Part shown: in pieces, positions 1 to 61,955 of the stretch
Layout of the letters: every line of letters begins with the position of its first letter
Numbering within the stretch: the stretch's first letter is position 1
From: Lepidodermella squamata
Lineage: Eukaryota; Animalia; Gastrotricha
Reading direction: 5' to 3'
Length of the DNA: 64,000 nt
Assembly: GCA_047495785.1 (NCBI GenBank)
Contig: JBLDXI010000042.1
Location: forward strand, 3,410,001 to 3,474,000
The notes under the pieces: model-generated
Seen by the model: the letters and a program-made list of their open reading frames with translations, nothing else
What the model was told of the DNA's origin: nothing
Databases searched by the model: none
Made by a program: the position numbers and the translations under genes

Positions 1-765
1 CTTTTCTCCCAACCGCCGTTATTTTTTATAAAAAGAACCAGCTGATCAATCGAAGCGCCGAGGTTGAAATTGTTGATAACCCGAAACCAGACAGGCGCGT
101 GAGCTTTCAAATGCTCAGTCATTTCCATCCAAAATTTGATGTCATTAGCGCTGAGAGAAACGCGACATTTCCGGAGTTCGAACATAGTAGCCAGAACTTG
201 GCGCAATAAGAAGGCGGCATCGTAATGAGAGAGATCAAATTTAACCGCTTGCACGGCTATTTTTCGATATAAGCCAGGTGTATTAATGGCTCCAATGCGG
301 CCCAATTCCATGAAAAACCACAAACGGCTGCTCAATTTATTTCGGATTTCCGATAACGAGCACGTGTCTACTGCGAGATCAGCCCAAATTTTTACCATCT
401 CGCAAAACGAATGAGGAAAGGTCACCTTACAATGAGAAAAACTATAAGAATTGATATATTTTACATGCGTAACAACCTTTGTCAAATCTTCTAGCAGCTT
501 GATTTCTGCAGGTGAGGCGACAGTTTTAATGCACAGCTATGAAATGTTGAAATAGTAAATTTTTGAAAAATTATTAAAAAATTACCCTATCAAGAACGGC
601 GAACGACGCGTGCCGAAAATCATCGTACTTCTTTAATAATGAGAATAGCCGCACTATTCCTTCAACACTTTGATCGCCGCTTCGAACGCCTTGCTTCCCC
701 AAATTAGATATCAGCTTCAAAAGCTCCGAAAAATGAACAACACTCGATGGAAGATTAAAGGGCAT
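1..765 (-). CDS. G1: MIF4G-like helical protein, short class similar to G8; 3' end runs off the window
   Basis: Exons ~765-586, 536-477 and 425-81 are joined by GT-AG introns. They give MPFNLPSS...FAVLDR/LCIKTVASPAEIKLLEDLTK/VTFPHSFCEMVKIWADLAVDTCSLSEIRNKLSSRLWFFMELGRIGAI...SLSANDIKFWMEMTEHLK. This parallels G8 (KQWARSHL...KFLEELCNFGVI...LRAEDAAFWQRRVVDLR). Confidence 0.7.
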
Positions 766-828
766 CTACTTGATAACAAAACAAAATTTCGCTAAAAATC
801 TGAAAATTACGAATAAATGTGTGTAAAA

Positions 829-3800
829 TCAACAGAATTCTTGTTTTGGAGAGCGTTTCAAGTCGATATCTGATTCCATATTCGAGCTCCGTTTTCGGCT
901 AGTCAACGTAACACCATAAACAATCGAATTTTCTCTAACAGGAGGTTTGGCGGCAACTTCCTCATCGTCATCCGATATTACTATCAATTCCGATTCGGGT
1001 TCAGCCTTGCAGAAGCAAGGCCGTTCTGGAAGCGATTCGCTCTGGTAGACTTGTTTATTCTGGTAAGGTATAGATGGGTTCTCGAAAACACCCGAAATCG
1101 CCTGAGCAGATCCGATTGCATTTTTCTGGAGTGCAGAAATGAAAACTTGATAGAACGTATCGCACAACTTTTCGGGACAGGAACTGAGGTAATTTTTCAC
1201 CTCTTCCACGGCTTTACTCAACTTTTCAGGTTGCCTAGCTGTAATAGGATTTATCGCAGCCAGTAAAATTGACAATTTTCGAGCAGCCCGCTGCCGCCCT
1301 GATAATTCAGGCCAGTTCGTCTAATTTCGGTCATTTTTCAAAAATCAAGAATATTACGAAATTAACCTACCCTTTTCAACAAGAGAATTTCGTGAATAGT
1401 CGCTTTCATAACGTCAGAGCTCTCGTTTTGTATACCGATTTCGGACAAAGTCTCGAAACAGCCCGATAATTTATCGCTCATTCCATTAGCTTTTGCGTGA
1501 GATTCAAGGTACTTTCCAGCATCAGTCATCATTTCCATGAGACCTTCGTATGCATGCTCAGTATTCACTTTCAATAGGCTGTCCAAAAATGTCATCACGA
1601 AACCGAAAGGAACGCAATTTTTGACGTATAACAGCCCGATTATTCTACCATAAATACATAACTTCGACTGAACTCAGATAAAACCTAAAATAATACCTCG
1701 GGGTCTCAATTAAATTTCTCTTCAATGAAAAATGTAGCTCATCGACCTGCCCTCTCAACCGTTTCTGCTGCCGAGGCTGTGTTGAACAAAATTATTAAAG
1801 GTAATAAAAATATACGAAACAATACCCAATCTGATGCTTGAATTTCACACTCTAATCGCGTCAATTCGCTAGAAATATGCTCAATATGAACATGGCTGAC
1901 GTTATTCAACCAAATTTCTTGCATAACAGCCATAAAACGAACACCTTTATCGTTCACAACCTTCAAATGAGATACGTTTTTAAGAAGTTATACCAACTCA
2001 ACGAGAGACAAACAAACCAGGCCGAGAGAAATGATGAATTCGCAAGCTCGATTTCGAGTCTTGCCATTGTGAATTTTATCTAAAATCCCGTTGCTAATTA
2101 ATCCGATGGAACGCTCAAACTCGTTCAATGAAAGATTTTTCAACGATGTCTTGAAAAGTTCAGCAGTTTCCGCGATTGATTCATCCGATTGGAGATCAAG
2201 CTCGTCGATTTTCGTATGAAAATCAAATAATTGAGACGGCTTTTCTTTTGGTGGAGCAGCTTCATTCAACATCGGATCATCCGCCAGATGAATTTTATTT
2301 GTCATTTTATGATTTTTGTGTTGCAATTTTGCTGACAATAATTCGCCTTGACCGTGGATGAAATTCCTGATTTCTTCGATTATCTCAGATCCGCTCAGCG
2401 AGCCGTCGAGAGACAAAGTTTTCAACTTCGCCAAACATGAAGAAATCGCCTTTTTCGACCCGCTTGATAGCATAGAAAACGTCATCGAGTCAGTTATTTC
2501 GGCAATTTCCGAAAGAAATTTATATAGAACTTGCAATCGGAGAATGTCTTCTTTCTGCGGGTTCTTTAGGTCAATTTTACACGATGCTATCAAACCTTCG
2601 GCGTACAACTGATAAATGCTGCTCGACAACAATTCATCCTCACAAAATCGCTGAACCAGCCTGGAAAATTCAATTAACATTGAAGTTTTTCCAGGGGGAA
2701 ATAAAAATTACTTCAAAAAAGTTCTCAGGCGATCTTGATCAACGGCTTCAGGATTAGTTCGAATAGCTGACTGACGTGCCCATGTCATGATGTATTTGTT
2801 GAAATATTTCCTACCGTCGAGTCTGTCCTTCTTACGGCCATTCAGTATCTGAAGAACGGAGATTAACATACAAGAACACTTTTTTGAATATTCACGGCAT
2901 ACATACTTGGGCGAAAAGCTGCTTGACAAAATAGTACAGCGCATTGGACGAATCGGTATCAAAGTCAATTACAGACGACGTCTAAAAAATAATAAATTTT
3001 AAAATCGAGCTAAAAAATCATGCCTAGTTTGTTGACAAGGCGAAAATATTAATCACTTAAGAATCCGAATCATTTTGACGCTTCCTATGCCTCCACGAAG
3101 AAAATCATTGAAATACCCCGAAATTTCGAATACCATTTACTCATCCCTATCTCCGGGTTTCAATAGTGAGACATTAGAAGGATTTTTCCGGTATTTTATT
3201 TTAAACATTCTTTGCAGGATCTCGATTCTCGACTCAGCATGCACGTTTGGCATCCTTATCTGGCTAAACATTTCGGCACCTTTCTCGAGCGCCGTGGCGT
3301 TCTCAGTGAATAAGATAAATTCGGCTTGGAGTCGCAACAAGCAACCGCCAACAAATGAACGCAGTAGTGATCTTCAAGTCTTTATGTCCTTAAAAAGCGG
3401 TTGTTGGCCAATCACGACACGAAGTATTGGAACAGTCTCTAAGCAGCGCGCTGGCTAGCAACGTTTCTCGACCCAAGATTTCGAAATTCAGATTTTCTGC
3501 CCGAAGAGAAGATCGCAGAGAAGATCGCGAGTTCAAGAACAATATGCTCAATGACTTGAAAGAGACGATATTGAACGAGATGAACAGAGCAGCCGGGAAC
3601 CGCGAAAAGCAGCCAAATGTTGCATCCATACGTGTGTATGTCTCGGAGTTATTTCCACATGGCCCTCTCACACCCATGGCTACAGCTCCCTGAGTTATTT
3701 GAGTTATTCCTTGAGGAACCCCGAGTTATTTGCTCACCTTCGCCTTGAAAACCCGATGCTTTATTTCCTTTCCTCTAACAAGGCGCAGTGTGTTTTTACC

Positions 3801-6800
3801 CTACAAGCTTTCAACAGTTGTTGTGTTATTTTTGTAATTGAAGGAGGCTTCATTCTTTATTTCTTTGACAGTGCGGCCGGCAGTCCTGTTTTTTCAATAG
3901 AATTACCTTATGGTCCCGACTGCTCGCCTGCCCTCGCTGAACTGATTGGGCAATCTTTGGACAGTGGGCAGATTTTGGACGGTTACGGAATTTGGAAAGA
4001 CAGAGTTCGAGCCGCCAACACCGTGGGCAAGCGTGAAATTTAGGCCTGCGACTTTTTTGGATACTGATATGACGGATTTTCGGAATTTTTGGATTTCTTT
4101 TCTAAAGATGATTTTGAAAACTCATTGCGAGTCAGTAGTTGAGAGCATGGGGTCAGTTCTCGATTGCCATGCGTCCCACGATTGGCCAATCAATGCTGCG
4201 GTATCTCGAGAAGTATTCTTACACTTGAAAAGGCCGAATCTGCCCATCAGAGCTCGGACAAATTGCTGCCCTCGACCGTCATTTCCAAGGGGGCAGGTGG
4301 AATTTTAAGCCTGAATCCGACCGGACACGAAATTCAAGGATCTTAGGGGTAAAAAAGGGGTCACAAGAATTTCCTCCAAAAATCCTTGCCATTGACGAGT
4401 GCCTTTTCAACAACAATGGTATTTTCAATCCAACGAAACACACTATTCGGCATCTATTCTTTCGACAATGTAGCCCGATGCTTCGAAAAATCCGTGGTGG
4501 GATTACGAATTATCGGAGGAGTCTAGCTTGACATTTCTTGAAAGCAACCTTCTCAGTCAGACTCGAAATCGACGATGAGGCTCTAGTTTGGAAGTTAGTT
4601 GACAAGCGACACGAACCTTTGCTAACGAACCTTTTCAACTGTTTTAATGGGGTTTGGACCTTCTGACCTCAACTAGACTATGTAGCTAGGGTTTTCAAGC
4701 ATGCCCAATAATTATTTTCGGGTCTGGTCGATCGCTGAACACTTCTCCTCACTCGTATTCGTGCAATTGGTTCAATTTCAGTCTTTTTTCTGATTCTTAC
4801 ATATAGGTAGCCGTATTGCTTTTTATTAATGTCTGAACCCGTGAATATTCTGGGAAGATTCTGGGACGGACCGGCGAGATTCCGCCGACCGACGACTTGC
4901 ATCTGCCTTCTATTATTTACTTGCCGATTTATCCGATGCCAACACGCTGCCCGAACGTAGCCTCGAAGCCGGAGGAGCCTGCTATAGAAGAAGTGTTCTA
5001 GCTGATAACTTGCTAAACGTTGATGATTATCTAGTGCCATAGAAGTTGTGCCATAGGAATATTGCTATTCCTATAACGGCATTAATGCAGCTTCTAATGC
5101 AGATATCTGTTTTTGTTAACTGTTTTCCAGTTTAGCGTATTTCAATTGCCGTTATTATCACTGCAAAAGTATTGAGGTTTGTCAACCTCCAATACTTTTG
5201 CTTCACTCGCTATTACGTTCCCGCGAAGGAAGAAATTGCCGAGAATCGCGGCGACACTTTGAATCGACCGGCTGCTATTGGCCCTCTCATCGAGCTAGCC
5301 GATACGGAAAATTACCGGTTCGAGGACCTGGAGTTGACGATGGAACAGATCCTCGAGGAAACACCAATTCAACCGGGTCGCATGTGCCGAAAAAGGCAGC
5401 TTGAACGGGCTGAAACTGCCACGCCTGTGATGGAGGTGAAGACGGCTAGAAAGGGTGGTTAAGAAAGCTTTCATGCTTCCTGTGACGACAGTGTATTATA
5501 TTATTGGATATATCATTATAAACAAGATTATAGGTTTTCAGAATTTAATTTAGTTGAAGTTTATTTGAAGAGCTCCTTGGGGCTCGGGGCTCTTCTCCTT
5601 CTTGGCTTTCTTCTTTAACTCGCTTTTACGAGAAAATATAAAATTAACGATTGTGATTAATTGCTCTCCTGTTTTAGATTGTTTTCATCTCGTTGTTACT
5701 CGATTGCTTTACAGCGCAGTCGGTATTGGCCACGGAAGATAACCAGGTAAGGGTCTCGATCGTTACATTGGCGCCGAGACCCGTTTTGGTTAGTGGTCGT
5801 GTGTTTTTGAATTTTGTGTCTGTGTTAACCTTGTTTCCGTTTGTTTGATGGCGGGACTCGGCAGGGGGACCCCACAGTCAGCGGGTAGGGTGGTGATGCC
5901 AGGAACCCTATTTGCGGGCGAGCAGGACTCTCAGGGGCAAGAGGATTCTCAGGATTCCCAGGGGGAGGTGCTCGTAGACCGATTTAGGATATCACTATTA
6001 CTCGTGGGAGGGTTCCAATATCCAGTGGCATTGTGAGATATCTTATGGTCGAAATCTGGCTCAAACCGAGTTCCCCTTACTATGTTGGATCACGTGATCA
6101 CAGACGCCATTCCACCGTTTCTCCTAGGCTACGGCCCCTTCGTCTTGCAGCTTGCAGAATTACCTGACACTAGCGCAAGCTGCTATTTTCTTGCTTTTGC
6201 AACAAGAGTTGATGTTCGAACGCCTGATCGATGAGCCTAATGCAAGGCGGGTTAGTGATCTCGGCCTGAAATGGGCCTGAAATGGCCTGAATGAGCTTTC
6301 GACGTTTCATTCACCTTCGAATTGTATCTCGGCGTTATAACCCGCCAACTACAATCAGCCTCCGGTGTTCCTGTACAACTGGCGAACCGGTTTGCTGTTG
6401 TCGACTTCATTCGAACGTGACTGGAATATCTCCGTCTGGGTTTTATTGCTCCGGAAACACCCGACGCCAAAACGCGGCGTCAACAAAAACTCAATTTTTC
6501 CAATTTTGCCATTCAACGGCGCATGTAACTAGGTGGCGGTTGTCCTGGAATAATGTCGCGCTTCCACGAGGTAATATGGAATGGAGCCGAAATGTGTCGA
6601 AATGTGTCGCAATGGCGAAAAGACGGAGGGTTTAAGATTCCACATCGGGCAACGCATCAAAAGCCGTCTGATGGACCTACTTGGGAAGGAGTTACTGAAG
6701 ACTTGTCCCATCGCCGGTGGCCGGGCTAAAGTGGATGGCGTGGTTGTTACGCGTCAAATCATACCCGAGGACCGCATTTTGAAAAGTAAGCTCGACGTGT

Positions 6801-8392
6801 CTATTTGCTGCTTTCGGCGTGTCTAATTCTTTTCTCTTCGACAGATTTCTTCCTCCAGCTGCCGGTCGTGCGATCTATTGGGCAAGACATGTCACGCAAT
6901 GCCAAAAACTACCGTAGTTACCGAAATACTAACCCGGGCTTATACAAAAATGATACCTCGAAAAATGGGGAAAAGTAGGCTTCTATTCAAGACTAGGCTT
7001 CTATTTGAGATAGGCTTATGCACGGAGACCTGACGTTACTTTCCGTCTTTCAATCTCAAAACTCATCAAAGTATTCATTATTAGTTATTAGCTAGGTCGT
7101 CTAATAGCTGGAAATCAAGACTAATAAGGAAAGCTTTCACTAAAATCATCATAAACCGCAGATTATTCCATATCTTCACGCATATTTCCCATATGCGATA
7201 CTGAATTTCTACTTACGAACTTGTTTTCTGAATGACTTTAGCCGTAAAATATTTACACTTTCGTGTAATAAACGAGAGATGAAAATTTTTATATTGATTT
7301 TTGACAGCTTCAATTATCAACTGTTTTTACACCAGCGATTTCTCTCTCATTTCAAGGCCGCGTGAGGCGTCATTAGGACTCAAATTCGAAATACACTCAC
7401 CTTATCCAAGACTGAAGCCGCAAAGTCAGCTCGCAACTTTTCGTCGTTGATGTGCTTTGCGAAATATTTCTTCAAGTCGCCAAGCAAACGATGAGTTTGG
7501 TTGTAATCTTCGACAACTCCACTGCCGAAAATTTGCTCTAGAAACGAGTCCGCAGTAGTTGACGGGTTCTGCTCATCAGGCGAATTATAACTGAAGACTG
7601 GAAACTTGATGTCACCACATGATGCCAAATGCTTGTGATCATGATTTCGACTGTTCAAATATTCGAATTTTTCTGCGCTATTCAACTCAGGAGTTTGCAA
7701 CATAACACCTGCAAGATGGCACGACGCCAAATTCAACGCAGAAATCTGGCTTGGATTCAACTTGAAAATGCCTTCAAGTTGCAATTCGTCGAGAAATCGA
7801 ACATAATCGCATAGGAAATGGACCGATTTCCGGGCTCCTCTTGCGCTGAAAGTCGCCATTTGCTTGAACAAGGAATCGACTTGAATTAGATCCTGTTTGG
7901 CCAACTCTTTAAATAGCCTGAAAATAAAAAATGCATTAAAAAAAATATTTTTTTTTTCAAAAATTTATACCTTAGCCTTGAGTCCATGAGCTCTTGGCTA
8001 TATGCGATTCTATGTCGTGGAATCGCCGAGTTTATTACGGTTTTGAAAGCACTATCGAATCTGACTTTTGCCTTAAGCTGCCGAGTTTCCTTGAAAATAC
8101 ACGATTGATAACCAGAAGAAAATAAGATACTCGGACTCACTGCGATAATTGATTTCAAAAACGTCACGAAATTCGGAATCACTTCAACGTCCATTTTGTA
8201 GCCAATCATGATCAAATCAGCCGCAGCACGAATCATGTCAGCGAACGATTGAGCCTTCAATAACAATGGCTTTACTTCATTGACCACACGCCTAATTTCA
8301 GCCATCGAAGAGTCGGATTTTAAGGCGGAAATTATAGGACCGAATGAAAGCTTGTTACTAACAGGCTTCACTTTCTCCTTCTTTTTACCCAT
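829..8392 (-). CDS. G2: protein with three MIF4G-like (eIF4G-derived) repeats and a Cys/SUMO/SIM/NLS tail
   Basis: Exons ~8392-8141, 8090-7971, 7917-7401, 2982-2907, 2847-2711, 2660-2019, 1961-1826, 1777-1697, 1645-1372 and 1320-829 splice in frame. The last repeat IIGLLYVKNC...AYEGLMEMMTDAGKYLE...SSDVMKATIHEILLLKR/TNW resembles eIF4G FIGELFKLKM...SLECLCRLLTTIGKDLD...SSRIRFMLQDVLDLRGSNW. Confidence 0.85.
5481..5785 (+). mobile_element. 5' LTR plus primer-binding site of a decayed LTR retrotransposon
   Basis: The termini TGTGACGA (5481) and TCGTTACA (5767) are imperfect inverted repeats. They are followed by a tRNA-complementary-type PBS, tTGGCGCCGAGACC. Degenerate internal sequence follows to about 6300. 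Confidence 0.65.
6910..7040. mobile_element. Degenerate small MITE (taccgta-type end, internal aggcttctatt repeats)
   Basis: It starts taccgtag and carries three aggctt(c)tat repeats. The design resembles the intact element at 24794-25245. Confidence 0.35.
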
Positions 8393-8460: not shown

Positions 8461-11400
8461 CTAAATTTCAGATTTGGGCGAACGTTTTACAACAAATTCT
8501 TGATTAAAATCGGAATCATTCGCCCTTTTCCGATTATGTCGCGAAACGCCATAAACAATTATTTCGCGATCGTCAAACATTGATTGAGGTTGGTCCATTC
8601 CTGTCGATTCGGGTTCGACCTTGCAAGAGCACGTATCGGTCTCGAATTGATCAAAATGCTCATGGTCTGATGTCAAAGCAGAGGTACCAGAAGACTGCGC
8701 AGCTTCGATTGAGCTCTTTTGTAAGGCCGAAATGAAAACTTGATAGAATGATTCGCACAATTTGGGCGCACAGGAACCGAGGTAGTTGTTGACTTCTTTC
8801 CCGGCATTGGCTAGTTTTTGCGGGTTTTTCGCGGTTTCCGGGTTGATTTCTGACAACAGAATCGCCAATTTTCGAGCAGCTCGATCACGAATAGACATTT
8901 TCGGCCATCCAACCTAAATTTACGAAATAAGATACATTTTCAGTCATTCGTTTAGGTTTCTATTCTCGCGATTCGTGATCATTACTGATCTCACGCTATG
9001 AAAGCATTGAGAACGATTTTGGGTTTCTAATCAATTTTGAAGCTCGACCGATTGACATTATCGCTGGATGTCATCGGCTGGTTGGTACCCCGACGATATC
9101 AATACTGGACGACCGAGATAAGAGACTTAATTACATTGTTTTCAAAGCGTCTGTGGAGGAAGCCGGTCGATGTGCGACTGCCGCATTGAAGTTCATCATC
9201 AACTTCAGTCTATTAAATCTTTTTTCCCAACGTGTTCACTATCTACACAATTTTTCCAAGTTTGATTATTACAAATATCACTGACGAACGTTCTTTTTCT
9301 AAATTAGCAAGAATCAAACTATTTTTAGGTCGACGATGACCCAAGATCGACTCAACGGGCTTGCAGTAATAACGATAAATCATAACCTTTAGAAACTGAT
9401 TAATACCGAAGCTAGAGAAAATCCAAGACGAAAATGTAGAGACAATATGGGCCGAATTAAAAACTATCTTCTTCGAAGATCATTTTTCTAAAAGGTTCGA
9501 AAAATTGTGTAGGGCGCAACTGGATGTATTTTATTAAAACGATTAAAATGACAAAATAACAGATTATTATTAGTATCATTACAGCACGCGATCTTCGCGT
9601 CGCGTGTTAAGCTACATTGGCGCCTAGGCGCCGTAACACCTGTGTGTCAATTATTCTCCCGTAACAATAGAAGAAAACGCCTATTTAAACTGACTGTTTT
9701 ACTATCGTATAGTATTATCGACCAAACGCCCAGAACTCACGCTTGTCACTTTTATATCTCTGCTTAAAACTGTGATTCAACCTGCTCATCACTAATTATA
9801 TGCTGCCTTCAAATTAGGTTGTTTTATGTCACTGATTTAACAATAAACAAGTTCTTGTAACCGAGCCGTTATTCTTATTCCGCGAGACACGCCTCACAAA
9901 TTGAAAAAGCGATGACATCGCAAATCTAGGCGCAGGCGATGGTTCCGACATGAGTTATCTCTTTTTTCTCTTGACAATCATATAAGCTGTATTGCTACTG
10001 AGCCTAGTAGACACCCTATTATGTCTTCTTTTTTATTTAGAATTGTCAATGATTTTAATGGAAGAGGCCCCGATGCTAAAAACTGCCTAGGGCCCCGGAA
10101 CATTTTCGGACATTAACGCTGACGCTAAGCAAGGTGAAATTCGAAAACCAATCGTACCGGCACTATAGAATTTGGAAAAAAATCGCCTCCGATGTTAATA
10201 AAGACTGTTCGACGCCTCCCACGACTAATGGCTAGCAATGCCGCCTGAAACACCGCGATTTGAAGCAGATGTACTCCGAAACGAATTTTTACTGTATTTA
10301 GAGTACTTCAAGTAATAACATTATCAGCTAATGCAGTATAATTGATTTATCTTCCAGCTCATTTTCATTAAGCGGTTGCTGATGTCAACGGACGATTTAT
10401 CGACGTTCTGTGATATTCCGGGAGGTCTAACGAGCGCAGTGTATTCAATAGAAGCCCATTATTACGATCAATAACCGAAAACGAACCCGCGTTCTTCACT
10501 AAATTTCCACATTTTAGGCGTCGGGGCTTATCCGCTACTCGATTGGCTAATGATTGGCTATTCGGCTCATGAGATTGCAACAGAAAATCCTACTGGCCAA
10601 CTTCGTTGTTGACAAGCCAGGGCAGTTCTTACCGTAGAGGACGCTTATCTACGGAAGTCATGTTATGAGTCTTATCTAATCGGTGTGAAATGCCAAAAAT
10701 ATAGCTTCGAGACTTTCGTCAAGATACGCCTGATCAGAAGAAAGTCACCAAAGTTATTGGTGGAATCAACTTCTAGAACGGCTTCGAAACTCTGTTATGG
10801 TCTATGGAATCCCAGAAGCTGAAATGGTTCCTGAGCTAAGTGACATAGCGATCGAATGTTTCCGGAAACATTCCCAACAAAATGTATCCCAGATCGCACC
10901 ACAAGGATGATTAAAGCGTTTGTTAATAGTGTGCTAACCACAGCATTCAAAACAGCGTTACCTACGGAATGAAAATCGAGCCGATGTCTAGTCTATTGGA
11001 TATGTCGAAGAAACTCGTGGAATATGCCAAGCGTACGACTAAGAATAAGACGTTGAAAGATGCCAGAATCAACTTTTTTCGTTCAATCCTAGTTTTCCGT
11101 TTTTAGGACTCAAAAATTGAAGAAGAGTATCGACGCGTTTTCAAATCACGGCGTACTTGCTTCCTAACTGTTGCGAATGTTGCGAATTCCCGACAAGAGG
11201 ATCCCAAAAACAGCCAGAGGAAACGGACGGGTCACCAACGTCCTAAGAACCAACCCCCGGCAAAGCACAACAAAACGAACATTGCGCTTGCAAATTTTCA
11301 AGAGGATATGTAGAAGATGGATGAAAGCTCAACAGGCGACCTACCTACCCCCGCACCGAACTGCCCTGTTCTGGAGGCCCGCCGTTGGAATCTGACAAGT

Positions 11401-26500: not shown

Positions 26501-26629
26501 CTTCGACTGGGAAGCTAATACAGGTTCGATTTTGGCGACGATTTGCGCGATATCGGCGGCTCCAGAGTCAGGTTTCAAAGAAGCGATAAGGGCGCGAAAT
26601 TCGTTTTCCAATTTTTCGTATTTTTTCAT
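20503..26629 (-). CDS. G5: protein with three MIF4G-like repeats, paralog of G2-G4
   Basis: ATG at 26629 (MKKYEKLENEF). Exons ~26629-26399, 26340-25730, 25673-25598, 25545-25411, 22058-21445, 21393-21229, 21179-20894 and 20835-20503. Motifs include CDYIRFIDEI, NHTHCESC, IVGQLYRKN, TDAGKAAE, CSAVTRAIINEIISLKE and GWPELSQCQRA. Confidence 0.8.
22287..22566 (+). repeat. Dispersed repeat with RGG- and Gln-rich coding potential, copy 2
   Basis: Blocks shared with copy 1 are aatgta.catgtcattt, gcgctaagcgtggcgga, acagggtcgcgcagatagg and tgactgagttga...ttgctgtcg.acataaaaggcgaaaa. Confidence 0.75.
23231..24705. mobile_element. Non-autonomous DNA element with palindromic subterminal repeats
   Basis: The palindrome (gccgta)TACTCATAnnTGAGTA occurs at 23231-23310 and six times at 24486-24705 with a ~41-nt period. 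An internal inverted repeat pairs ~23357-23382 with ~24131-24156. Confidence 0.55.
24794..25245. mobile_element. MITE of the Tc1/mariner-pogo type
   Basis: It has perfect inverted ends taccgtattttacgaattat / ataattcgtaaaatacggta, including the TA target site. Multiple subterminal ctgccct repeats are present. Confidence 0.85.
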
Positions 26630-44943: not shown

Positions 44944-45119
44944 ACAAAATAGCTAGAAAATTCAGATTAAATCATCGATAAAGTTTCTTTCAATTAGAAA
45001 ATTTGACAAAATTTGGAAGCACAACAACGAGATTATATAAGTAGATATGTATGAAGTTAGATCAGTCATTTGAGTAGAATATGTCGTGTTAAGATCTCTC
45101 AACAAAGCGGAGTGGGGAG

Positions 45120-50399: not shown

Positions 50400-50488
50400 G
50401 AAGAAGTAATCAAAATTCTAACAAAATTTGAAAAAATTGGGAATTAATAAGTAATTAAATATACTAAAAACAAATGGCCTTGAACGGT

Positions 50489-53400: not shown

Positions 53401-56400
53401 GAAAGTCAAATTTCAACGACGAAAGTCAACGCAAGGGTTATAGGATGTGGCTATTCGCTTTCTCTAAGGCTGAAGTCTGAACACCCTGGTTACAGCTTGC
53501 TTCAAGATCTACTCTTGTGGCTACATGCGGGTGATGCCATGTCCCACCTTGAATTTCTTCACGATTGGTGATTGCGAATGGGAATGGCAGTCCTTATAAG
53601 CCATTGGAAGGGCTAACAGCGCCGGTCAACAGCGACGTTCACGGCCGACAAGGAGCTTGAGCTGTGTGCAAGAAGAAATCGCGCAAATCGCGAGTGCCCA
53701 AATTTGGGCTCGCCAGTAGATATGACTACTGAAACGGCTAAATTGCCGGCTTTGCGATTCACAGCTGGCACCCAGGCTTTCAACATGTCATCGGGACTAG
53801 CTTTTCAGGTCTCAGGTGAGCTGCTGACGGACGGGAAGGCGAATTGGCCTATCGTACGGCTTGGTAGTTTCAAGCCCGTCTCTAGAGTCACTGCATTGCC
53901 AGAGCGGCGGCGATCGTTGTTCGTGGACCCTACTATGTACGGCCACCAACAGGGCGCTGAAAAGGTGTTGATCCGTGCAGACTCAGTGCAGGCCGGTGTT
54001 GTTGAGAAGCACATTGGTCTGGAGCCTGAAGTGCTGCGAGCCGTGGCTGAGAAAAGCTCAACTGATGCTCAAGGTGCCACCGGTGAAATTCTGCCGATGT
54101 AGATTGCATTGAGGGTTGACTGAAACAGATTTTGATTGTGTGTTATACTCCTAGGCCTTCCATCCACAATAAACTTGTTAGCTAATCTGTGTTTAGAGGT
54201 TCTTCTTAACCCAAATCTGCCAAATTCTATTACCAGTATTTATCAAATTTCCTATTTATCAAATTTTCAGTGAAGTGCCACTGAAATCGATTCCACTCTG
54301 TTTCAAGCGGTATGTGGCCAGCTAGATGCAATGTTCTGAATTCTGCAATTTTCACTTCCGATTTTGCAATTTTCTTACGATGACAAATTCCAAAATTTCT
54401 TCAGATTCAGAAGATGTGTGTACAGTTTGTCATGAAGTCCTGGAGGAGCCGGTCAAGTGCTCTCAAACCCGAAAACAGACGATGTCACCTCGACTTGTTG
54501 TTTCAATTATATCTGGGCACAAAGGCCACCCTTCCAAAAAGGAAATTCACAAATCGGTTTCCTCGACTAGCAGCTTGCCTCGTACAGAACTTGATGATGA
54601 CTGGACTTCAAAAGCAAAATCAGCGCTCGATGGCACGGTTTCAGTGTGCTGGAAAAATTAAAAATCCCAGGCGTGAGAAAGTGGCTCTGTCACTACGTCG
54701 TGATTTACGACGTTCGGGAACGTCGAGAAATTGAGCGTTTAGGGAATCAACTAATATATATGATTGAGCTAAATTCAAGGAAACGCTTCGAAACAGTACT
54801 CAGAAACATCGAATTTTGGCAAAGTTGAAACAAATATTATGAACCTTTGACGGCTGAATTTGATTTGGGTGGTGAAACAGGCTTCGCAGGGCTAGGAACA
54901 GTAAGAGTGGTGGCAACAGCAGGAACCGGGACTGGGGCAGGTTTCTGAACCGGAACAACGTTAGTAATAACAGCGGCGGGAGTAAAATTGACCACTGGGG
55001 CAGCTGGTTGCAGAGCCTGCTCGATTTTTTTAGATTCCGATTTTCGCAGACATATCGCTCCTTTCCTCTATAAAAAAATATAAAAAAATTAGAAAAAAAT
55101 AAAACAATTTTACTTACTCTCTCCAGATCTGTTAAATAAGCCAGCATTTCAGGCACTTCATCCGAAAAAGCTTGACATGACCGTTTGAAATCTTGACTCC
55201 TCATCTGCCGACTGATGTAAGCAGGCAATCCAACGCCCAAATGGCTCAAATGAGCCGGTGACATCGGGGTGGCTTCATTATCGTAAAACTCGTCCATGTC
55301 TCGGATGAATCGATACAGCAAGTAGCAACACGCCGAAGATTTGTAGTTTTGCAAGATTTGAGGCAAAACTGTTGGCGCAATGACCTTCGCTTGGGCTAAC
55401 GCCGTCACGTACCATACTTTATGAATTGAAGGTAACGGATTATCGGAAATTCCGAAGGTCTCGTTCAACCAATGAGTAGCTGAGTCTTTGAACCCGAAAA
55501 TTCTCTAAATAAGTCAATTCATATAATTTGGAAATGTATTCAACATTTCTTCTTACTTCTTTTACTAAAAAAATGGCGCTCGATCCGGCGGTTCGTTCAA
55601 GCCTGGAAATCTGAAAAATCCAGCCTAATAATAATTTCACATAATTTTAATTGAAAATTTACCGCTTCGTGAATCGAAAATAACGCGTCAGTTTGGAAAT
55701 CATCGTAAAGAAATCGTTTCACCATTTCGCTGATTTTTCCCGATGGATTTTCGCCATTCGAATCGAGATCGATAATTTCAACAATAAATCGTTTCAACGC
55801 CACCATTCCAGTTATTCGATCGCCAGTCAAAGTCTGGATACGGGAAGGTAGTGGCAATCCGTCTGGGTAACTGCATGCTTCATCCGAGTGCGTGTGAATG
55901 ACGTCACGTGACGTTAAATAATCGGTTATTTCCTTCGAAATTTCCAACTCGCCGGGCGAAATCATTTCATTGGCGATCAGATTCAAGTAACACGCCAGTC
56001 GATTCCAATGGTGACTATCATTACCACCGAAGCAATGCAATTGTAAGACATCGTTATTCTTCAACAAATCGAGGAGGTAGGGAGCGGCTAAATGAAGATG
56101 GCGAGATTTTGCGATACGTTTCGCGAGTCGATACAAAACATGAGGTGGTAATCGATTCACCTTGACCAATTCATTCAAAAACCTTGAAATTAACGTTACT
56201 TTCATTCATTCAGATAAAGAAACAACAGACTTGAGTGAAATGAAATAATCCGAAGTTCGACGGCAAGATGGAGGCGGAACACTTTGAACAGCATTAACAA
56301 GTGCCATGGTGAAGGGTGACAGATTTTTCCGATCACTGGCAATAGAGCCGACTTTAACCTATAGAAAGGATTCACTTTTCAATTCGATATTTTTCAATTT

Positions 56401-59400
56401 GCGATCAGCTCACTTCGCCGCAAAGGGAGAACAATTTAGCTAGCAAGTGTCGTTGCGGTTCCGTTTCCAACGTGTAACCCTAAAACACACATAAATAATC
56501 GATTACCTTTCAACTCCGAAACTTGGACTTCAATTGTCATTATTTACATACAGAAAGTATGACGAGCAGGGTAGGTCGCTACGCAAAGCCGAAAAATTCG
56601 TTTCCACAGTGATATATAGCAGCATGCGTAATATACAATGTACTATGCTAGACTCATTGCTGACCAGTCGCAAAGCATGATAACAACGCAAAAGTATGAA
56701 TTACACTCATAGTAAGCTACAATTCTATTAACATATAACTTTTTCATATGGACTCATCGAACGATATCGTCGGCATGAAGACAAACTGTCGTCAAAATGC
56801 TTCAGTATTAAGACACCCAAAATTATTTGCTGGTGTTATTAGAACTCCTAATATCGCCGGGGTCAAGACCTGGTGGGACGGGCAGCTTGTTGCTGCGGCA
56901 AAATCTTCGCGACGGGGCGACCTGGAGGTGGACAAAGAGCAGCCGGGTCTCCTTTTTTGTCATGTCCTTAGTGGATAAATGCGGTACCGTCTCACAGGTA
57001 TAGATAATTACGACCGGTGAATCTCGCACTTCCCTTGCTTCCACCAGCCTCCACCAGGGAATGGGTACGTATTTCGTCGCAACCAGTTCTATGGAATGGT
57101 AGACGAAAACTGGGCTGGGGTCCCCTCACACATGGAATACCCCAGCGAGCTACAGAGCCATGCCGCTGATAATAGTTTGGACCTTTCTATCGACAGTGCG
57201 GCGAGTGATGGCGGCGGCGCTAGCTTTGCTGGCGTTGGCAGACGTAGCCACAGCTTCAGCCTCATTTTCTAGCTCGTTTTGTTCCTGTAGGGACTCAACA
57301 GGCGATTGCACTGACCGGAAATCTGCCCCTCTCGCGGGCGCTAAACTAGTAAATTAATACCAGAACGCTTCAGTGATGTAAATATTTCGTCAAGAGCTTA
57401 GTGGTGCAAATATTTAGACCCCATTGAAATCTCAAACATCTGTCGTCTTTCTTCAACATTGATTTACCGTGTCTGCCTAATTTTTCATTCATCAATCTTG
57501 TGTCTGGTGCAAATGTATATACGTTTGATATTAATTTTGATACTTCGAAGTACATTTCACACCAACTTGCCATAAGTTTTGCTATTTCTGCATGTCTGAA
57601 CGGTGAAATTTTACACTTTGTTGCAGCCTCTAGTGGCCTCTAGCCAAGTACGCACGACTGACGAACTGTTGAAACTGTTAACGGCCCAGCGTACCACACG
57701 CGGGGGATGGCTCGACGCCTCTAGCTTTAAATTGACTACATTTTTAGCTCTTTGTTACGCTTTTATTCTCGTTCTATTTTACAAACTAGTGTTTCATCAA
57801 TCTTATCTTTATCAAATATCTTTACAATTATTTCAGGCGTGCTACCACCGTTCAACGCTTGGCTGAACGTGCAGCCGAATGGCATTCCTATGGCACGTGA
57901 GCACACTCCATCATTTCAAAAATCGTTCACTGAAAACTGATCAATTATTATAGTTGAACAAATTTATCAGCTGAATCTTTATCAGTGCGCGGTCCAAGTT
58001 GCTGTACGGGATAAAGTAAACCTTATTTATGAAAAGGTATTCTATGAGGACTTGCTGCTGCAGGTATAATTTAACCTCATTAGTAGGTATGCCTTCTCCA
58101 CATTTCGTCGTTTGTCGTTGTGGTCGAGGGAATAATTTGCGTTTTTTTTATTGCTGTCGGCTTAATCCTGCTAATCGTGATTCGACGCCTTATTCGCAAT
58201 CTGTTGGAAGGTAACATCTTGATGTTCCATAGGCAGAGAAAATAATATTATTATTTCTCTTCGTCGACTCGAACGACACTCAAGCCAAAGCTACGGCCGA
58301 GCTACGCCAATGCATACCCGCGATCGAAACGACTGTTGAAAGTGGTCAAGAAAACGATGTCATCGATTCGGCGAAGCGACCCTGTCTTCAACCGTCGGTG
58401 TCTGTTGAGAGCGGCGATGATGTTTGGGCGGACTATGACGCGAAACTGGCTGCTGTTCAGGTGTCTACCCTCGATTAGATATATGTGTAATTTCAATTTC
58501 AAGCGCGCCAGCCGGCAACAGGTGGTAACAACCACAACGAAGACGACGCGTGATGCGTGATCACAACAGCAAGGCTCTACACAGACTGCTCCAAGCCGTG
58601 ACTGCAACAGCAATGACAATTAAAAACTCTTAAAAATTTCTTCTGAAATCTGAAATCTTGTATTGCCTGAAAAAGTTTATACTGCTAAAATAATAATACT
58701 GCTTGCCTGTTAAATATTTCCTTTTAATTGGAGTTTACTGGGACAGCCAAGCCTGCTGCTACTACTCTGATGGACACTCGAGGGCACAACGTTGTATGTA
58801 CCCGAAATGCCTGCATACGGCTATTAACTACTAAGTCGGCGAGTCTACCGGTTCTCGTGGTCGAAAGCGAAAGTCATTGCTTGATGGTTGGTGGTTCGGT
58901 ATTGTTAGCGAACCGGGCCGAGTTCAACCTCGCCTCAAGTGAGTTCTCCTACTCGCCGCTCAGCCCGTCCGAATCGTTGCCCGACGATGTCCGCGGGGTC
59001 ATCGTCCGTGCGGCTGAACCCGGATGATGGTTTGCGTTTTGTGCTAGCCAGCACGAGTCACGATCTAATCATTCATTTATTTACCCATTAGTTTTTATCT
59101 ATTTGTTACTGACTTAATATGATGAGGGGCGGTTGATTCCGTTGAAATTTTCCCTGCCATACTTTGGTAAAACTACGTTTTCATCGTCTATCTTCTATCT
59201 TTCCAGCTAATGCAAATCACTTTGTGATATTTTTGACAACTCACCTTGCTCAGAATGCAAGCTATGCCATCTTGCAAGTCAGACAGCCTCGTTAGACGCG
59301 CCAAAGCCGCCCGAACTTGCTCCGTGGCTTGTTCAAATGAGATAGAACTCGGTTCGGAAAACAAAGCCGTCAAAATCGGCGACAACGCATAAGGCCCAGG

Positions 59401-59517
59401 TTTGTGCGGATTCGAAAAGTTGGCGTACCAAAATGATCGCAAATCATTTTCAGGCTGCGGCCGGTAATAGGTGCTGGTATGCTGCTGAGGTGCCGGATAC
59501 CAAAATGGCTGAGCCAT
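50489..59517 (-). CDS. G10: protein with four MIF4G-like repeats, closest paralog of G9
   Basis: Exons ~59517-59245, 56479-56414, 56358-56232, 56182-55663, 55610-55557, 55505-55118, 55067-54846, 52860-52816, 52763-52486, 52429-52021, 51721-51529, 51473-51270, 51217-50863 and 50809-50489. It is collinear with G9 (GDRITG, AFGIAxxNLLD, AVKEWVLGKxRCP, KLWYHSELCKxGLV, PQLIGxLFxAEITPV). Confidence 0.87.
53190..53700 (+). mobile_element. FLYWCH-like zinc-finger / MULE-associated remnant
   Basis: SQREGGTIVLVNSFKFVARERRKDGRSVACSANKVCKAKV resembles a FLYWCH domain. The downstream sequence is disrupted. It lies antisense in a G10 intron. Confidence 0.5.
58310..58480 (+). mobile_element. Gypsy integrase remnant
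   Basis: YPRSKRLLKVVKKTM...AAMMFGRTMTRNW resembles the integrase motifs YHPQSNG.AER and PAELMFGR. It is degenerate. Confidence 0.4.
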
Positions 59518-59591
59518 TATATAGGGAAAATCACGAATTAAGACACCCTAAAACTTGAAAATTAGATAATAAGAATAAGCAATATATTTTG

Positions 59592-61955
59592 TCAACGCAA
59601 CAAAGCTCTTTTAGCAAGTTCTTCAGGGGTATGGACGTCTGATGTTCTTTTGCGAGTCTCAACTGGTTTGGATTTGCAGGACGTGGAATGCGAACCCGGA
59701 ACCGCCGCACCAGGTAATAATAATGATTCAAGTTCCGAAAAAAGACTTTCGAATAGTGATTGGACCGCCGCAAAATCAACTTTTGATTTGACGAATTCTC
59801 GAATATTTTCCAACATTTGTTTTCTCGAGCCAACTTCAGCATTCTGCACCTCGAGGAATTTAGCATACAAAACTTTAACAGCTTTTGCTTCTTCGCTTTT
59901 TCGGGACTGCTGACTAGAACTGGCTGATCCGGAAGATGAAACTCGACATGTATCGCTCTCATAACTCGACTGTTTCATCTCCTTTTCAGATTCGGGAATA
60001 ACATTAGAATTTACCAACTTAAGGCGCATAAGAGCATCATGAAACCAGGGTTCTCGCCCCTTCTTCGAGTCCGTAATCACGGCTGATCGAAAGCATTCGG
60101 CCAAGTTGGGGCTGACCAAGGAAATTTCCTAAATTAGATCAATTTATCAAATTCGTGTGAGTCTCAATCGCCACAGGCCCTTTTCAACTAATACCTTGTG
60201 TACATTTTCGAGGAATCTGGAAAAATGATCAGGAATGATAAAGCGATCAAGGCACGTCGTATAAATAGAAGACATCAATGCCGAAACAGCTTCTTCGAAT
60301 GATGTTTTCGAAAGCGAGCACAAAGTTCGCTTGACAGCAGCCACAGTTTCATCATTAGGATTTTTATTTTTCGATAGCTCGGAAATCAATCGAGCCAGCT
60401 TCGTTTTCAGATCTTCCTCAATTTTCAAATCGAAATAACGGCAATGCACTAGTAGACCTTTCGCAGCATTTTTCTTCTCTCTTTTAGACAGGCGATCAGT
60501 ATTGGGACGATACTTTCTCGATTTGATGGACTTGAGTTCAGAATATCTCTGCGAAAAAATCTTCACATCCAAAATGAAATAAAATTCGGTTTGATTACAA
60601 AAACGAGTTCTTACTTTATGGATCTCTGAAGTATTCTGCAGAGCCTCTCGCGATTCGGTATCATCCGCATCAGAGTTCTTCAAATGATCAATCAATAATT
60701 TAGAATGGGTGACGATAACTGCCGAAGATTTTTCATCGAACTGCCAAGATAAATTAGTTGCCAAATTGTTAAAACTTTGTAAAATAAGGTAGATCGCTTT
60801 GAATTTCGACCGGCTGGCTTTCCGAGAGCCAAAATAATCGAGTAGGTATCCGAAATCCAGGACGCGGCGTTTACATAAAACAGCGTTGAAGCTAGAAAAA
60901 TTAGTCAATTATTTTTAAAAACTGTTAATTAAATAATTTATATACCTCGCAATCTTGGCGAGGTCAGACTTGATTTCAACATGCGAAATGCGATTCTCGA
61001 ACCAACTTTTGGTGAAATCTGGAAACAAATTGGGCGATTTCTGAAACAAAATTGTACGCGATTCCGCATGAAAGAAGTTCGAATTGCTTACCTCCAGAAG
61101 TTTCGACAGTAATAATTGAGATACCCCAGAAAAATGCTGCGATTTGAACATTTCGTCCAAAATAACGTCGATATGGCAACGTAATGCCGCGGTATTTCGC
61201 TTTGTTTGGAGGATAACTGGCTCGATCTGATTGAAATTATATTGAAATCTTTCGACAGAATCCGTCAAGAGTTGAATCACTAATCGACGTGTTACGTCTG
61301 TATCAGTCTCAACAGATTCAATTTGAGCTCGGTTTTCCATAGGGACAGCTGAAAGGGAAATGTAAAAAACTGTTCATTTTTATAGAAAATCATTATGCAC
61401 CTCTCCTTCGAACGAAACGACTTTTTAAATACTTTTCAATATCGCGCATTTCTTCCGAACAGTTGCAATCAGATTTAAACTGATGCACCATGTCAGTTAA
61501 CAGGCTGGCGTTTTCGTCCCAGATGAATGAACATGATTTGACTTTGTTGGATCGCTCGTCGAGTTGATCGATAAATCGTATCAGTTCGAACATGCACGCA
61601 ATAGCAACCGAATTCTGCCGCTGTTTCGCCAAGTTTTCAAACATGTTGCAAAACGCATTGCTTCCAATGAGATTGCGGTTTACGAGCATATTTAGAGAAC
61701 TAAAAATTTAACAAGATTCAACAATTTTATGGAAAAATAAATAAAATTGAGTAGAACTTACTTTAAGCGCTGAAAGTTAGCCACGAAGGAACGCTCAAGT
61801 GGATGTGGAATCTTGGCTGCATATGTTTCAAGAGATTCTCTGAGTGAATAGCGATGTTTGGCAGGTTCAGCCTAAAATTAAGAATTAGAAAGCAAGCATA
61901 AATACTTCCAGCTGAAATATCATTTTTCTGCCTTTGCCCTCTCCCAACTCTCCCT
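59592..61955 (-). CDS. G11: divergent MIF4G-like repeat protein; 5' exons not found in this window
   Basis: Exons ~61955-61905, 61871-61762, 61700-61400, 61349-61092, 61041-60945, 60891-60614, 60548-60195 and 60129-59592 splice in frame. FQRLN/SLNMLVNRNLI...CMFELIRFIDQLDE parallels SRLR/LFKELAKQDLI...LCDYVRFLDEL. It ends RKRTSDVHTPEELAKRALLR*. No start codon was identified. Confidence 0.7.

What the first reader, a model, noticed from the sequence alone, without database searches (positions are those of the whole stretch)
1..61955. Tandem family of at least 11 genes encoding poly-MIF4G proteins apparently derived from the eIF4G middle domain
Seen: eleven same-strand paralogs whose spliced products are chains of 1-4 helical repeats. 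The best-preserved repeats match remembered metazoan eIF4G MIF4G sequence at both ends (G7 exon 1; last repeats of G9, G10 and G2-G6), including the coiled-coil insertion before FIGELF and the NWVP exit. I see no eIF4E-binding region, MA3 or W2 domain. Known: MIF4G domains of eIF4G, CWC22 and CNOT1 bind and regulate DEAD-box helicases, and eIF4G is a target of viral proteases and IRES elements. Inference: this is a lineage-specific, fast-diverging family with an architecture I do not recognise. It could act as helicase adaptors, as RNA-silencing or transposon-control scaffolds, or as antiviral decoys.
Basis: partly seen in the sequence, partly recalled or inferred. Interest (0 to 1): 0.92.

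Follow-up and report, generated by a model that had tools for sequence, protein, structure and literature searches.

The report
Tandem family of eIF4G-derived poly-MIF4G genes
This animal genome carries about two dozen side-by-side genes whose proteins are just 1-4 copies of one domain taken from the translation factor eIF4G plus a family-specific tail; the genes checked are intact, one is shown to be transcribed and spliced, I found no paper on such a family, and its function is unknown.

Summary
The window has 11-13 minus-strand gene models; the count depends on two possible joins. They belong to one tandem cluster of at least 24 genes over about 235 kb of contig C42, and no copy lies elsewhere in the 121-Mb genome. 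Six models (667-1090 aa, 8-12 exons each) have open frames. All their introns are GT-AG except one GC-AG intron, which RNA contigs confirm. RNA contigs confirm the splicing of one 875-aa gene.

The last repeat is an eIF4G-type MIF4G domain. Exon profile against the PDB: eIF4G1/eIF4GII, E 2e-6. Family HMM against the genome's own eIF4G: E 6e-23. AlphaFold2 model against human eIF4G1 HEAT1: Z 16. The upstream repeats, which Pfam misses, are also MIF4G: pLDDT 94, the 12 best of 48,161 PDB chains are all MIF4G domains, and the HMM hits the genome's own eIF4G at E 8e-11. No MA3 or W2 match lies in the cluster, and the curated genes have no N-terminal extension.

A conserved C-terminal tail (Cys pair, acidic SIM-like stretch, basic NLS-like end) suggests a nuclear role. 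Paralogs are old (34-41% identity, synonymous sites saturated), so "fast-diverging" is not shown. Function is inferred only: most likely multivalent regulators of DEAD-box helicases. First readers flagged the same cluster in neighbouring windows of this genome.

The parts
1..765 (-). The gene runs off the left edge, and its last exon is G000:C42:3408643-3409593 (L001:8643-9593).
   Evidence: Family profile hit at window 42-530, hmm 65-191. The last exon, 317 aa, matches the MIF4G HMM at positions 47-225, i-E 1e-13.
829..8392 (-). M12 (G2): 9 exons, 924 aa, three MIF4G repeats plus tail. It has a 4.4-kb intron at 2982-7400.
   Evidence: Open frame with GT-AG introns. Repeats at aa 21-222, 276-485 and 537-764.
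8461..15146 (-). M11 (G3): 9 exons, 931 aa, three repeats plus tail. It has a 3.5-kb last intron at 8914-12421.
15186..20269 (-). M10 (G4): 10 exons, 875 aa, three repeats plus tail. It has a 2-kb intron at 17140-19177, and one GC-AG intron at 15612-15664.
   Evidence: Five splice joints appear directly in RNA contigs of run X1, and three more are supported by a shifted joint or loose ends. The 16257-16311 intron rests on the model only. Translation is open. Repeats at aa 25-211, 299-445 and 510-737.
20503..26716 (-). M9 (G5): 8 exons, 844 aa, three repeats plus tail. It has a 3.35-kb intron at 22058-25410.
26759..29834 (-). M8 (G6): single-repeat gene (last-repeat type) plus tail. Its last intron holds a reverse-transcriptase fragment. 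The model is approximate.
   Evidence: Exon hits at 29478-29846, 28171-28491 and 26786-27088. RVT_1 match, E 8e-22, at 27063-27578 on the plus strand.
34722..35763 (-). M7: one repeat followed by the exit motif NPNWMRPK. It is probably the 3' end of M6 (G7) across a ~4-kb intron. The join is not shown.
   Evidence: N-half at 35245-35664 and C-half at 34943-35272. Model.
39811..44943 (-). M6 (G7): three repeats. The first exon is 44555-44943. The model is approximate.
44962..46220 (-). M5 (G8): about 353 aa, one repeat followed by GGWSRRPRR, which resembles eIF4G's NWVPRR exit.
   Evidence: Profile hit at 45425-45763. Model.
46366..50399 (-). M4 (G9): 12 exons, 1090 aa, four repeats plus a tail that begins NGWVPLS.
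   Evidence: Open frame with GT-AG introns. Repeats listed. The last repeat matches the MIF4G HMM at positions 58-226, E 3.5e-15.
50489..53110 (-). M3 (3' part of G10): 8 exons, 667 aa, two repeats plus tail. Its exons parallel the 3' half of M4.
   Evidence: The last repeat matches the MIF4G HMM at positions 31-227 of 227, E 3e-21. Pfam MIF4G on exon 50854-51234 gives E 2e-4.
54641..56625 (-). M2 (5' part of G10?): two repeats whose exons parallel the 5' half of M4. The join to M3 is not shown.
   Evidence: C-halves at 55900-56205 and 55115-55501. Model.
59188..62154 (-). M1 (G11): at least three repeats. It is a paralog of the gene at L002:3471-6857. The model is approximate and its 3' part looks degenerate.
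   Evidence: Hits at 61417-61707, 60612-60908 and 60165-60440. Model.

Best explanation
Shown: the window is part of one tandem cluster of at least 24 genes on one strand, spanning about 235 kb. The genes arose by repeated duplication of a gene that already carried several copies of eIF4G's middle (MIF4G/HEAT1) domain. Each protein has 1-4 MIF4G domains and then a family-specific tail. The tail starts with a Trp 'exit' motif like eIF4G's NWVPRR. It continues with a helical stretch, a Cys pair in CxCK.EP.E, an acidic-hydrophobic SIM-like stretch and a basic NLS-like C-terminus. The genes lack eIF4G's eIF4E/PABP-binding N-terminus and its MA3 and W2 domains, so they cannot assemble an eIF4F complex. 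The genes checked are intact, and one is transcribed and correctly spliced.

Inferred: MIF4G domains of eIF4G, CWC22, NOT1, Sgd1/NOM1 and Gle1 work by clamping the two RecA lobes of a DEAD-box ATPase. By analogy, these proteins most likely act as multivalent adaptors or regulators of eIF4A-family or other DEAD-box helicases on RNA. The basic C-terminus suggests they act in the nucleus. Different paralogs may be specialised for different partners or RNAs.

My confidence is about 0.9 for the identity and about 0.3-0.35 for the helicase-adaptor mechanism.
For: Identity of the repeats:
- The profile of seven window exons hits only the eIF4G1, eIF4GII and yeast eIF4G MIF4G C-terminal halves in the PDB, E 2.4e-6 to 2.8e-4.
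- Pfam MIF4G gives E 2e-4 on one exon and 1.4e-4 on a neighbouring single-exon repeat.
- A locally built MIF4G HMM hits the spliced last repeats at up to E 3e-21 over positions 31-227 of 227.
- Family-only HMMs hit the genome's own eIF4G far better than its DAP5, UPF2, CWC22 or CBP80. Last repeat: 5.8e-23 for eIF4G-a, 6e-19 for eIF4G-b, 6e-7 for DAP5, 6e-4 for UPF2. Upstream repeats: 7.7e-11 and 2.9e-8 for the two eIF4Gs.
- AlphaFold2 of a single-exon last repeat (pLDDT 89.6): best chains are eIF4G1 HEAT1 Z 16.0, DAP5 15.0 and yeast eIF4G 14.8.
- AlphaFold2 of a single-exon upstream repeat (pLDDT 93.9): the 12 best of 48,161 chains are all MIF4G domains, Z 12.5-10.9, covering the whole model.

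Intactness and expression.

Order of duplication: repeats group by their position in the protein across paralogs, with supports of 86-100. The mid-domain intron is phase 2 in all three repeats of M10.

Tail motif: present in at least 11 cluster genes.

No MA3 or W2 in the cluster.
Against: There is no direct evidence for helicase binding. The single co-fold, a heterologous eIF4A3 with a last repeat, gave no verdict. Several MIF4G domains bind non-helicase partners instead (UPF2 MIF4G-3 with UPF3, SLIP1 with SLBP, PAIP1, CBP80). I did not check whether eIF4A-contact residues are conserved. The two folded repeats come from a paralog about 10 kb to the right of the window, not from a window gene, because every window repeat is split by an intron. 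Z scores of 12-16 fall in the range that helical repeats can reach by shape alone, so the fold argument rests on which chains rank first and on the sequence profiles. The NLS and SIM readings are motif-level only.
Confidence: 0.55

Rival explanations
1. The family is a genome-defence repertoire. The diversified MIF4G arrays would act as decoys or sensors for viral or transposon factors that target eIF4G (proteases, IRES RNAs), or as scaffolds in nuclear, SUMO-linked transposon silencing. The large tandem family would reflect an arms race.
For: The cluster is large, held on one strand and has many divergent paralogs. The tail carries SIM-like and NLS-like motifs. Constraint looks rather relaxed, with a crude omega near 0.4. 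Giant-virus MIF4G proteins are among the structural look-alikes.
Against: The paralogs are old and stay position-specific in the tree, with pN well below pS, rather than showing recent turnover. No site-level positive selection could be tested. There are no expression data from germline or infection.
Confidence: 0.2
2. The proteins are cytoplasmic competitors of eIF4G. They would titrate eIF4A, eIF3 or mRNA away from eIF4F and so repress or redirect translation, in the manner of truncated eIF4G, DAP5 or PAIP1.
For: The repeats are closest to the eIF4G, DAP5 and PAIP1 MIF4G domains. No eIF4E-binding region is present.
Against: The conserved basic C-terminus points to the nucleus. This rival gives no reason for about 24 diverged copies or for 3-4 domains per protein. 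eIF3 and eIF4A contacts were not tested.
Confidence: 0.12
3. The proteins are plain protein-protein scaffolds with non-helicase partners, as UPF2 MIF4G-3 binds UPF3 and SLIP1 binds SLBP. On this view the MIF4G fold is reused only as a binding platform.
For: Upstream repeats share only about 10-15% identity with eIF4G. Known MIF4G partners are diverse, which I take from established knowledge of UPF2, SLIP1 and CBP80.
Against: Nothing argues specifically against it. The eIF4G-type origin makes a DEAD-box partner the default expectation for at least the last repeat.
Confidence: 0.1
4. The array is decaying duplicates, or generic HEAT/ARM repeats that only resemble MIF4G by chance.
For: Pfam gives no hit on the largest ORFs. 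Foldseek E-values are only about 1e-3. M8, M1 and M7 look interrupted or truncated.
Against: Six genes keep open frames across 8-12 exons. All their introns are GT-AG except one GC-AG intron, which RNA contigs confirm. One gene is spliced in RNA. pN is 0.40-0.45 against pS of 0.68-0.82. MIF4G chains head a search of 48,161 structures for both models, and the sequence profiles are significant.
Confidence: 0.03

Closest known systems
eIF4G middle domain (MIF4G / HEAT1) of eIF4G1, eIF4G3 and yeast eIF4G
   Same: It is the best sequence and structure match for both repeat types. The long helix before the FIGELF-like helix and a Trp-containing exit motif are shared.
   Different: There is no eIF4E/PABP-binding N-terminus, no MA3 and no W2. 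The domain is repeated 1-4 times. The tail is family-specific. The genome has its own canonical eIF4G pair on contig C12.
UPF2 (three tandem MIF4G domains; PMC3936715)
   Same: It is a chain of three MIF4G domains of similar overall length.
   Different: The genome has a separate canonical UPF2 on contig C9. The family HMM scores it at 6e-4 against 6e-23 for eIF4G. The tail differs, and I saw no UPF1-binding region by inspection.
DAP5/p97/NAT1 and PAIP1
   Same: These are eIF4G-derived MIF4G proteins without an eIF4E-binding site. They rank second and fifth structurally for the last repeat, Z 15.0 and 13.2.
   Different: DAP5 keeps MA3 and W2, and PAIP1 has one MIF4G plus PAM motifs. The genome's own DAP5 lies on C46 and scores only 6e-7.
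Unstudied MIF4G-only arrays in other animals: Orchesella dallaii CAL8148144.1 (3 domains) and CAL8148149.1 (4), Planococcus citri XP_065222935.1 (5), Aphidius gifuensis XP_044010136.1 (2), and fish 'eIF4G3-like' proteins
   Same: The proteins are made of several eIF4G-type MIF4G domains and nothing else that Pfam recognises.
   Different: Where the tree could place them (the springtail, mealybug and fish proteins), their repeats group within each species, so they are separate and younger duplications. The wasp protein did not enter the tree. Their domains are strong Pfam matches (190-370 bits), whereas this family reaches 21-27 bits at most. They give no match to this family's upstream repeats beyond the generic MIF4G signal.
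Unnamed metagenome proteins P0002 (813 aa) and P0003 (606 aa), ENA assembly ERZ27332993
   Same: These are true family members. They have the same order of upstream-type and last-type repeats, E 7e-58 and 2e-42. Their repeats fall inside the family's two groups in the tree. They also sit in a tandem array.
   Different: They are intronless single ORFs on a 37%-GC contig of an unknown eukaryote, and they lack the Cys/NLS tail at their ends.

Membership tests
MIF4G domain (Pfam PF02854) | A profile match at Pfam's gathering score of 30.8 bits | tested here: not met
   Only contiguous exons could be scanned, and every window repeat is split by an intron. The best scores were 21.5 bits, E 2e-4, and 27.3 bits, E 1.4e-4. 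Spliced proteins scored against my own MIF4G HMM, built from 122 Pfam-seeded domains, reach 67 bits, E 3e-21, over positions 31-227 of 227. That HMM was built from proteins picked by similarity to this family, so its scores are mildly biased upward.
MIF4G domain (Pfam PF02854) | A ten-helix, five-hairpin right-handed solenoid | tested here: met
   AlphaFold2 models have pLDDT 93.9 and 89.6 with 10-11 helices. The top-ranked PDB chains are MIF4G domains over the full length, Z 12.5 and 16.0. The models are of a paralog at L002, not of a window gene.
MIF4G domain (Pfam PF02854) | Significant sequence homology to solved MIF4G domains | tested here: met
   Window-exon profile A1: eIF4G1 at 2.4e-6, and the top five hits are all eIF4G. 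Upstream-repeat profile A3: the top four hits are eIF4G at 0.002-0.01.
eIF4G proper (eIF4F scaffold) | An N-terminal region with the eIF4E-binding motif and a PABP site | tested here: not met
   Repeat 1 starts about 15-50 residues from the N-terminus in M9-M12, and the RNA-verified M10 begins with its ATG 24 residues before repeat 1.
eIF4G proper (eIF4F scaffold) | MA3 (HEAT2) and W2 (HEAT3) domains | tested here: not met
   Whole-genome six-frame scans with PF02847 and PF02020 give no match on C42 between 3.30 and 3.54 Mb.
eIF4G proper (eIF4F scaffold) | Binds and stimulates eIF4A | tested here: inconclusive
   The co-fold of eIF4A3 (P0134) with a last repeat returned 'no answer'. eIF4A1 was not tried.
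UPF2 | Orthology to UPF2's three MIF4G domains and its C-terminal UPF1-binding region | tested here: not met
   A canonical UPF2 lies elsewhere, on C9. The family HMM gives it E 6e-4, against 6e-23 for eIF4G.
CBP80/NCBP1, CWC22, NOM1 | Best reciprocal similarity to these MIF4G proteins, or an MA3 partner domain | tested here: not met
   The genome's own CBP80 and CWC22 score 0.07 and 0.0045. No MA3 match lies in the cluster.

The most novel reading that the evidence does not exclude
The cluster is a diversified repertoire of nuclear helicase adaptors built from a translation-factor domain. Each paralog would couple a DEAD-box ATPase to a different class of RNA, such as transposon or viral transcripts, possibly through SUMO-dependent recruitment. 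That would make it an innate, multigene RNA-surveillance system of a kind not yet described.
Probability: 0.12. Interest if true: 0.85.

Novelty: new variant of a known kind. Interest (0 to 1): 0.62.

Why it matters
MIF4G is the best-understood protein module for switching DEAD-box RNA helicases on and off. In the well-studied MIF4G proteins it occurs once per protein, or three times in UPF2 and CBP80, and those genes are single-copy or low-copy. Here one animal lineage has multiplied an eIF4G-derived MIF4G both inside the protein (up to four copies) and in the genome (about 24 genes). It has also removed everything that ties eIF4G to translation initiation and added a tail that looks nuclear.

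If these proteins bind helicases, they form a natural library of diverged MIF4G surfaces for studying partner specificity. If they act in defence or silencing, that would be a new use of a translation-factor domain. The finding also shows that MIF4G-only arrays have arisen several times independently in animals and have not been studied.

Tried and rejected
- Literal motif search for FIGELF and NWVP in six frames: nothing in a family reading frame.
- Pfam on the ten largest ORFs: no MIF4G hit. Those exons carry the C-half of one repeat and the N-half of the next.
- R1 C-half exon profile A2 against the PDB: no MIF4G hit. Homology of the upstream repeats needed the wider profile A3, the family HMMs and the fold.
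- First gene-finder pass: it read through in-frame introns. The retrained pass fused neighbouring genes. I curated six genes by hand, and the rest remain approximate.
- dN/dS between paralogs: synonymous sites are saturated, so it is not computable.
- Identifying the organism: a neighbouring PPCDC gene gave 43% as best identity, unnamed. eIF4A3 gave 84-88% to many ecdysozoans. The organism stays unidentified, and its own proteins are not in the searched sets.
- The search for homologous proteins with P0002 found only itself. The length limit of that tool applies, so this is not evidence of absence.
- Co-fold of eIF4A3 with a last repeat: 'no answer', which is neither support nor evidence against.
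- ESM Atlas by shape and by features added nothing beyond MIF4G, HEAT and giant-virus look-alikes.
- No whole window protein could be folded or sent to Pfam, because spliced sequences have no reference and I did not type them in.
- Read laying was given 5,301 letters.
Full report
**What is in the window**

The sequence is eukaryotic, with about 41% GC and introns of about 48-60 nt. Six-frame ORFs on the minus strand form a paralogous family.

RNA contigs of run X1, laid on 15100-20400, skip introns whose ends read GT..AG on the minus strand, and one intron is GC..AG. Five joints appear directly. Three more are supported by a shifted joint or by loose ends. One intron (16257-16311) rests on the model only. 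Together these give a 10-exon, 875-aa gene, M10, spanning 20269 to 15186.

I wrote a small splice-aware gene finder and curated its output against M10. This gave five more complete open frames: M12 (924 aa), M11 (931 aa), M9 (844 aa), M4 (1090 aa) and M3 (667 aa). All the introns in these five models are GT-AG.

The other models (M1, M2, M5-M8 and the partial M13) are approximate. Exon-by-exon parallels with M4 suggest that M2+M3 and M6+M7 are each one four-repeat gene split by a 2-4-kb intron. Without them it is 13.

**Extent of the family**

A profile of seven window exons finds 24 matches in the 121-Mb genome. All lie on contig C42 between 3,304,147 and 3,539,170, and all are on the minus strand. 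I fetched 258 kb around the window. Two family profiles collect about 90 and about 58 exon pieces there, and none is on the plus strand. The window is therefore the middle of a tandem cluster of about two dozen genes.

**Are the repeats MIF4G?**

Last repeat:
- The seven-exon profile hits only eIF4G1, eIF4GII and yeast eIF4G in the PDB, at the C-terminal half of their MIF4G domains, E 2.4e-6 to 2.8e-4.
- Pfam MIF4G reaches E 2e-4 on one exon.
- A MIF4G HMM that I built from 122 Pfam-seeded domains hits the spliced last repeats. The best is M3, over positions 31-227 of 227, E 3e-21.
- An HMM made only from cluster sequences hits the genome's own canonical eIF4G (contig C12) at 5.8e-23 and its neighbouring paralog at 6e-19. 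It hits DAP5 at 6e-7, UPF2 at 6e-4 and CWC22 at 4.5e-3.
- No window repeat is contiguous, because each has an intron before the FIGELF-like helix. I therefore folded a single-exon last repeat of a paralog about 10 kb to the right, L002:3471-4163. The model has pLDDT 89.6. The best of 48,161 PDB chains are eIF4G1 HEAT1 (Z 16.0, 206 residues aligned), DAP5 (15.0) and yeast eIF4G (14.8), followed by PAIP1, CWC22 and UPF2.

Upstream repeats, which Pfam does not see:
- A jackhmmer search from a single-exon upstream repeat (L002:4219-4857) links the window's upstream repeats to the last repeats.
- Its profile's top four PDB hits are eIF4G, E 0.002-0.01.
- The family-only HMM hits the genome's own eIF4G at 7.7e-11.
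- The AlphaFold2 model has pLDDT 93.9. The 12 best of 48,161 chains are all MIF4G domains: yeast and human eIF4G, CWC22, mimivirus vIF4G, DAP5, UPF2 domains II and III, and PAIP1. Their Z scores run from 12.5 to 10.9 over the full length.
- Foldseek agrees, with modest scores (TM about 0.5, E about 2e-3).

Z values of this size can arise among helical repeats by shape alone. The argument therefore rests on which chains rank first, together with the sequence profiles.

**What is missing and what is added**

Genome-wide scans with MA3 and W2 find the expected canonical genes but nothing in the cluster. In the three-repeat genes, repeat 1 starts 15-50 residues from the N-terminus, so there is no eIF4E- or PABP-binding region.

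After the last repeat comes a Trp motif: NGWVPLS, NGWPELS, NPNWMRPK, and GGWSRRPRR after the single repeat of M5. These resemble eIF4G's NWVPRR as I recall it from human eIF4G. The genome's own eIF4G reads KDGWVFKQR at that position.

A tail then follows and recurs in at least 11 cluster genes. It has a Cys pair in CxCK.EP.E, an acidic-hydrophobic stretch such as ELIVISDDDEE, and a basic end such as KR..KR. I read these as SIM-like and NLS-like from the motifs alone.

**History**

Paralogs in the window share 34-41% amino-acid identity. Synonymous sites are saturated (pS 0.68-0.82), while pN is 0.40-0.45. The duplications are therefore old and the genes have been under constraint.

In M10, 28 exonic differences from the contigs of runs X1 and X2 split into 12 synonymous and 16 non-synonymous. 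That gives a crude omega near 0.4. The list was truncated, so this is only a hint.

A maximum-likelihood tree puts all last repeats in one clade (100/100) inside the eIF4G-type group. Upstream repeats form a second group (98/98). Repeats sort by their position in the protein across paralogs. The mid-domain intron is phase 2 in all three repeats of M10. The multi-repeat gene therefore existed before the cluster grew.

**Relatives elsewhere**

HMMER against 1.8 billion representative proteins finds only 95 hits at E 0.001 or better. Only four reach 1e-10.

True family members are two unnamed metagenome proteins, P0002 (813 aa, three repeats in the same order) and P0003 (606 aa). They are intronless and lie in another tandem array on a 37%-GC eukaryotic contig.

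MIF4G-only arrays also exist in a springtail, a mealybug, a wasp and fishes. In the tree, the springtail, mealybug and fish repeats group within each species, so those arrays are independent inventions. The wasp protein did not enter the tree.

Five literature searches found only UPF2 described as a tandem-MIF4G protein, and nothing on a family like this.

**How it probably works**

This section is inference. The well-studied MIF4G domains closest to these repeats regulate DEAD-box ATPases: eIF4G with eIF4A, CWC22 with eIF4A3, and NOT1 with DDX6. Proteins made of several such domains but lacking all eIF4F contacts are best explained as multivalent helicase adaptors. The tail suggests a nuclear location.

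I give this about one chance in three. The main alternatives are a defence or silencing repertoire, cytoplasmic competitors of eIF4G, and non-helicase scaffolds. A co-fold of eIF4A3 with a last repeat gave no verdict.

**Verdict**

"Fast-diverging" and the proposed functions are not shown. This is a new family and architecture built from a known domain, and it is interesting but not yet mechanistically informative.

First readers of this scan flagged the same cluster in the adjacent windows.

Noticed in passing
window 27063-27891 (+): A reverse-transcriptase fragment (Pfam RVT_1, E 8e-22) lies on the opposite strand, inside the last intron of the single-repeat gene M8.
   Followed up: partly
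window 2982-7400, 8914-12421, 17140-19177, 22058-25410: Four close paralogs (M12, M11, M10, M9) each have one intron of 2-4.4 kb among introns of about 50 nt. M10 and M9 have it at the same exon junction, while M12 and M11 have it at other junctions. The contents are mostly unrelated. M10 and M9 share about 230 bp at 79% identity (17700-17926 against 22345-22567).
   Followed up: partly
window about 6906-7188: A dispersed repeat of about 280 bp sits inside M12's large intron. At least 39 other copies lie on many contigs at 79-98% identity, so it looks like a SINE or MITE.
   Followed up: partly
window 11400-12200: A GC-rich block inside M11's large intron has long open frames on both strands and no Pfam match. 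The intron as a whole has only a few partial copies elsewhere in the genome (contigs C74, C85, C26, C32, C10).
   Followed up: partly
window 36311-36824; 37910-38081 and 39367-39539: A stretch of about 514 bp matches its own reverse complement at 84% identity, so it is a palindrome. Two 173-bp direct repeats at 97.7% identity lie 1.3 kb apart. Both features sit in the gap between M6 and M7 and look like mobile-element remains.
   Followed up: no
window 15612-15664 (-): This is a GC-AG intron, and an RNA contig confirms that it is spliced out.
   Followed up: yes
L023 and L027 (G000:C12:438001-446000 and 418001-425000): The canonical eIF4G gene has its MIF4G and MA3 parts in one 958-aa exon. 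A second eIF4G paralog lies 20 kb away on the same strand.
   Followed up: partly
L024 (G000:C9:2070001-2077000): The canonical UPF2 gene lies directly beside a helicase gene whose sequence looks SKI2/MTR4-like by eye; it matches the Pfam DEAD family. Both are on the same strand.
   Followed up: no
L028 (G000:C10:487001-494000): Two CWC22-like copies, each with an MA3 match, lie within 3 kb of each other.
   Followed up: no
L005 (ENA ERZ27332993, contig k141_278390): A metagenome contig from an unknown eukaryote (37% GC) carries a same-strand array of this family's genes as long intronless ORFs, next to a Patched-like gene.
   Followed up: partly
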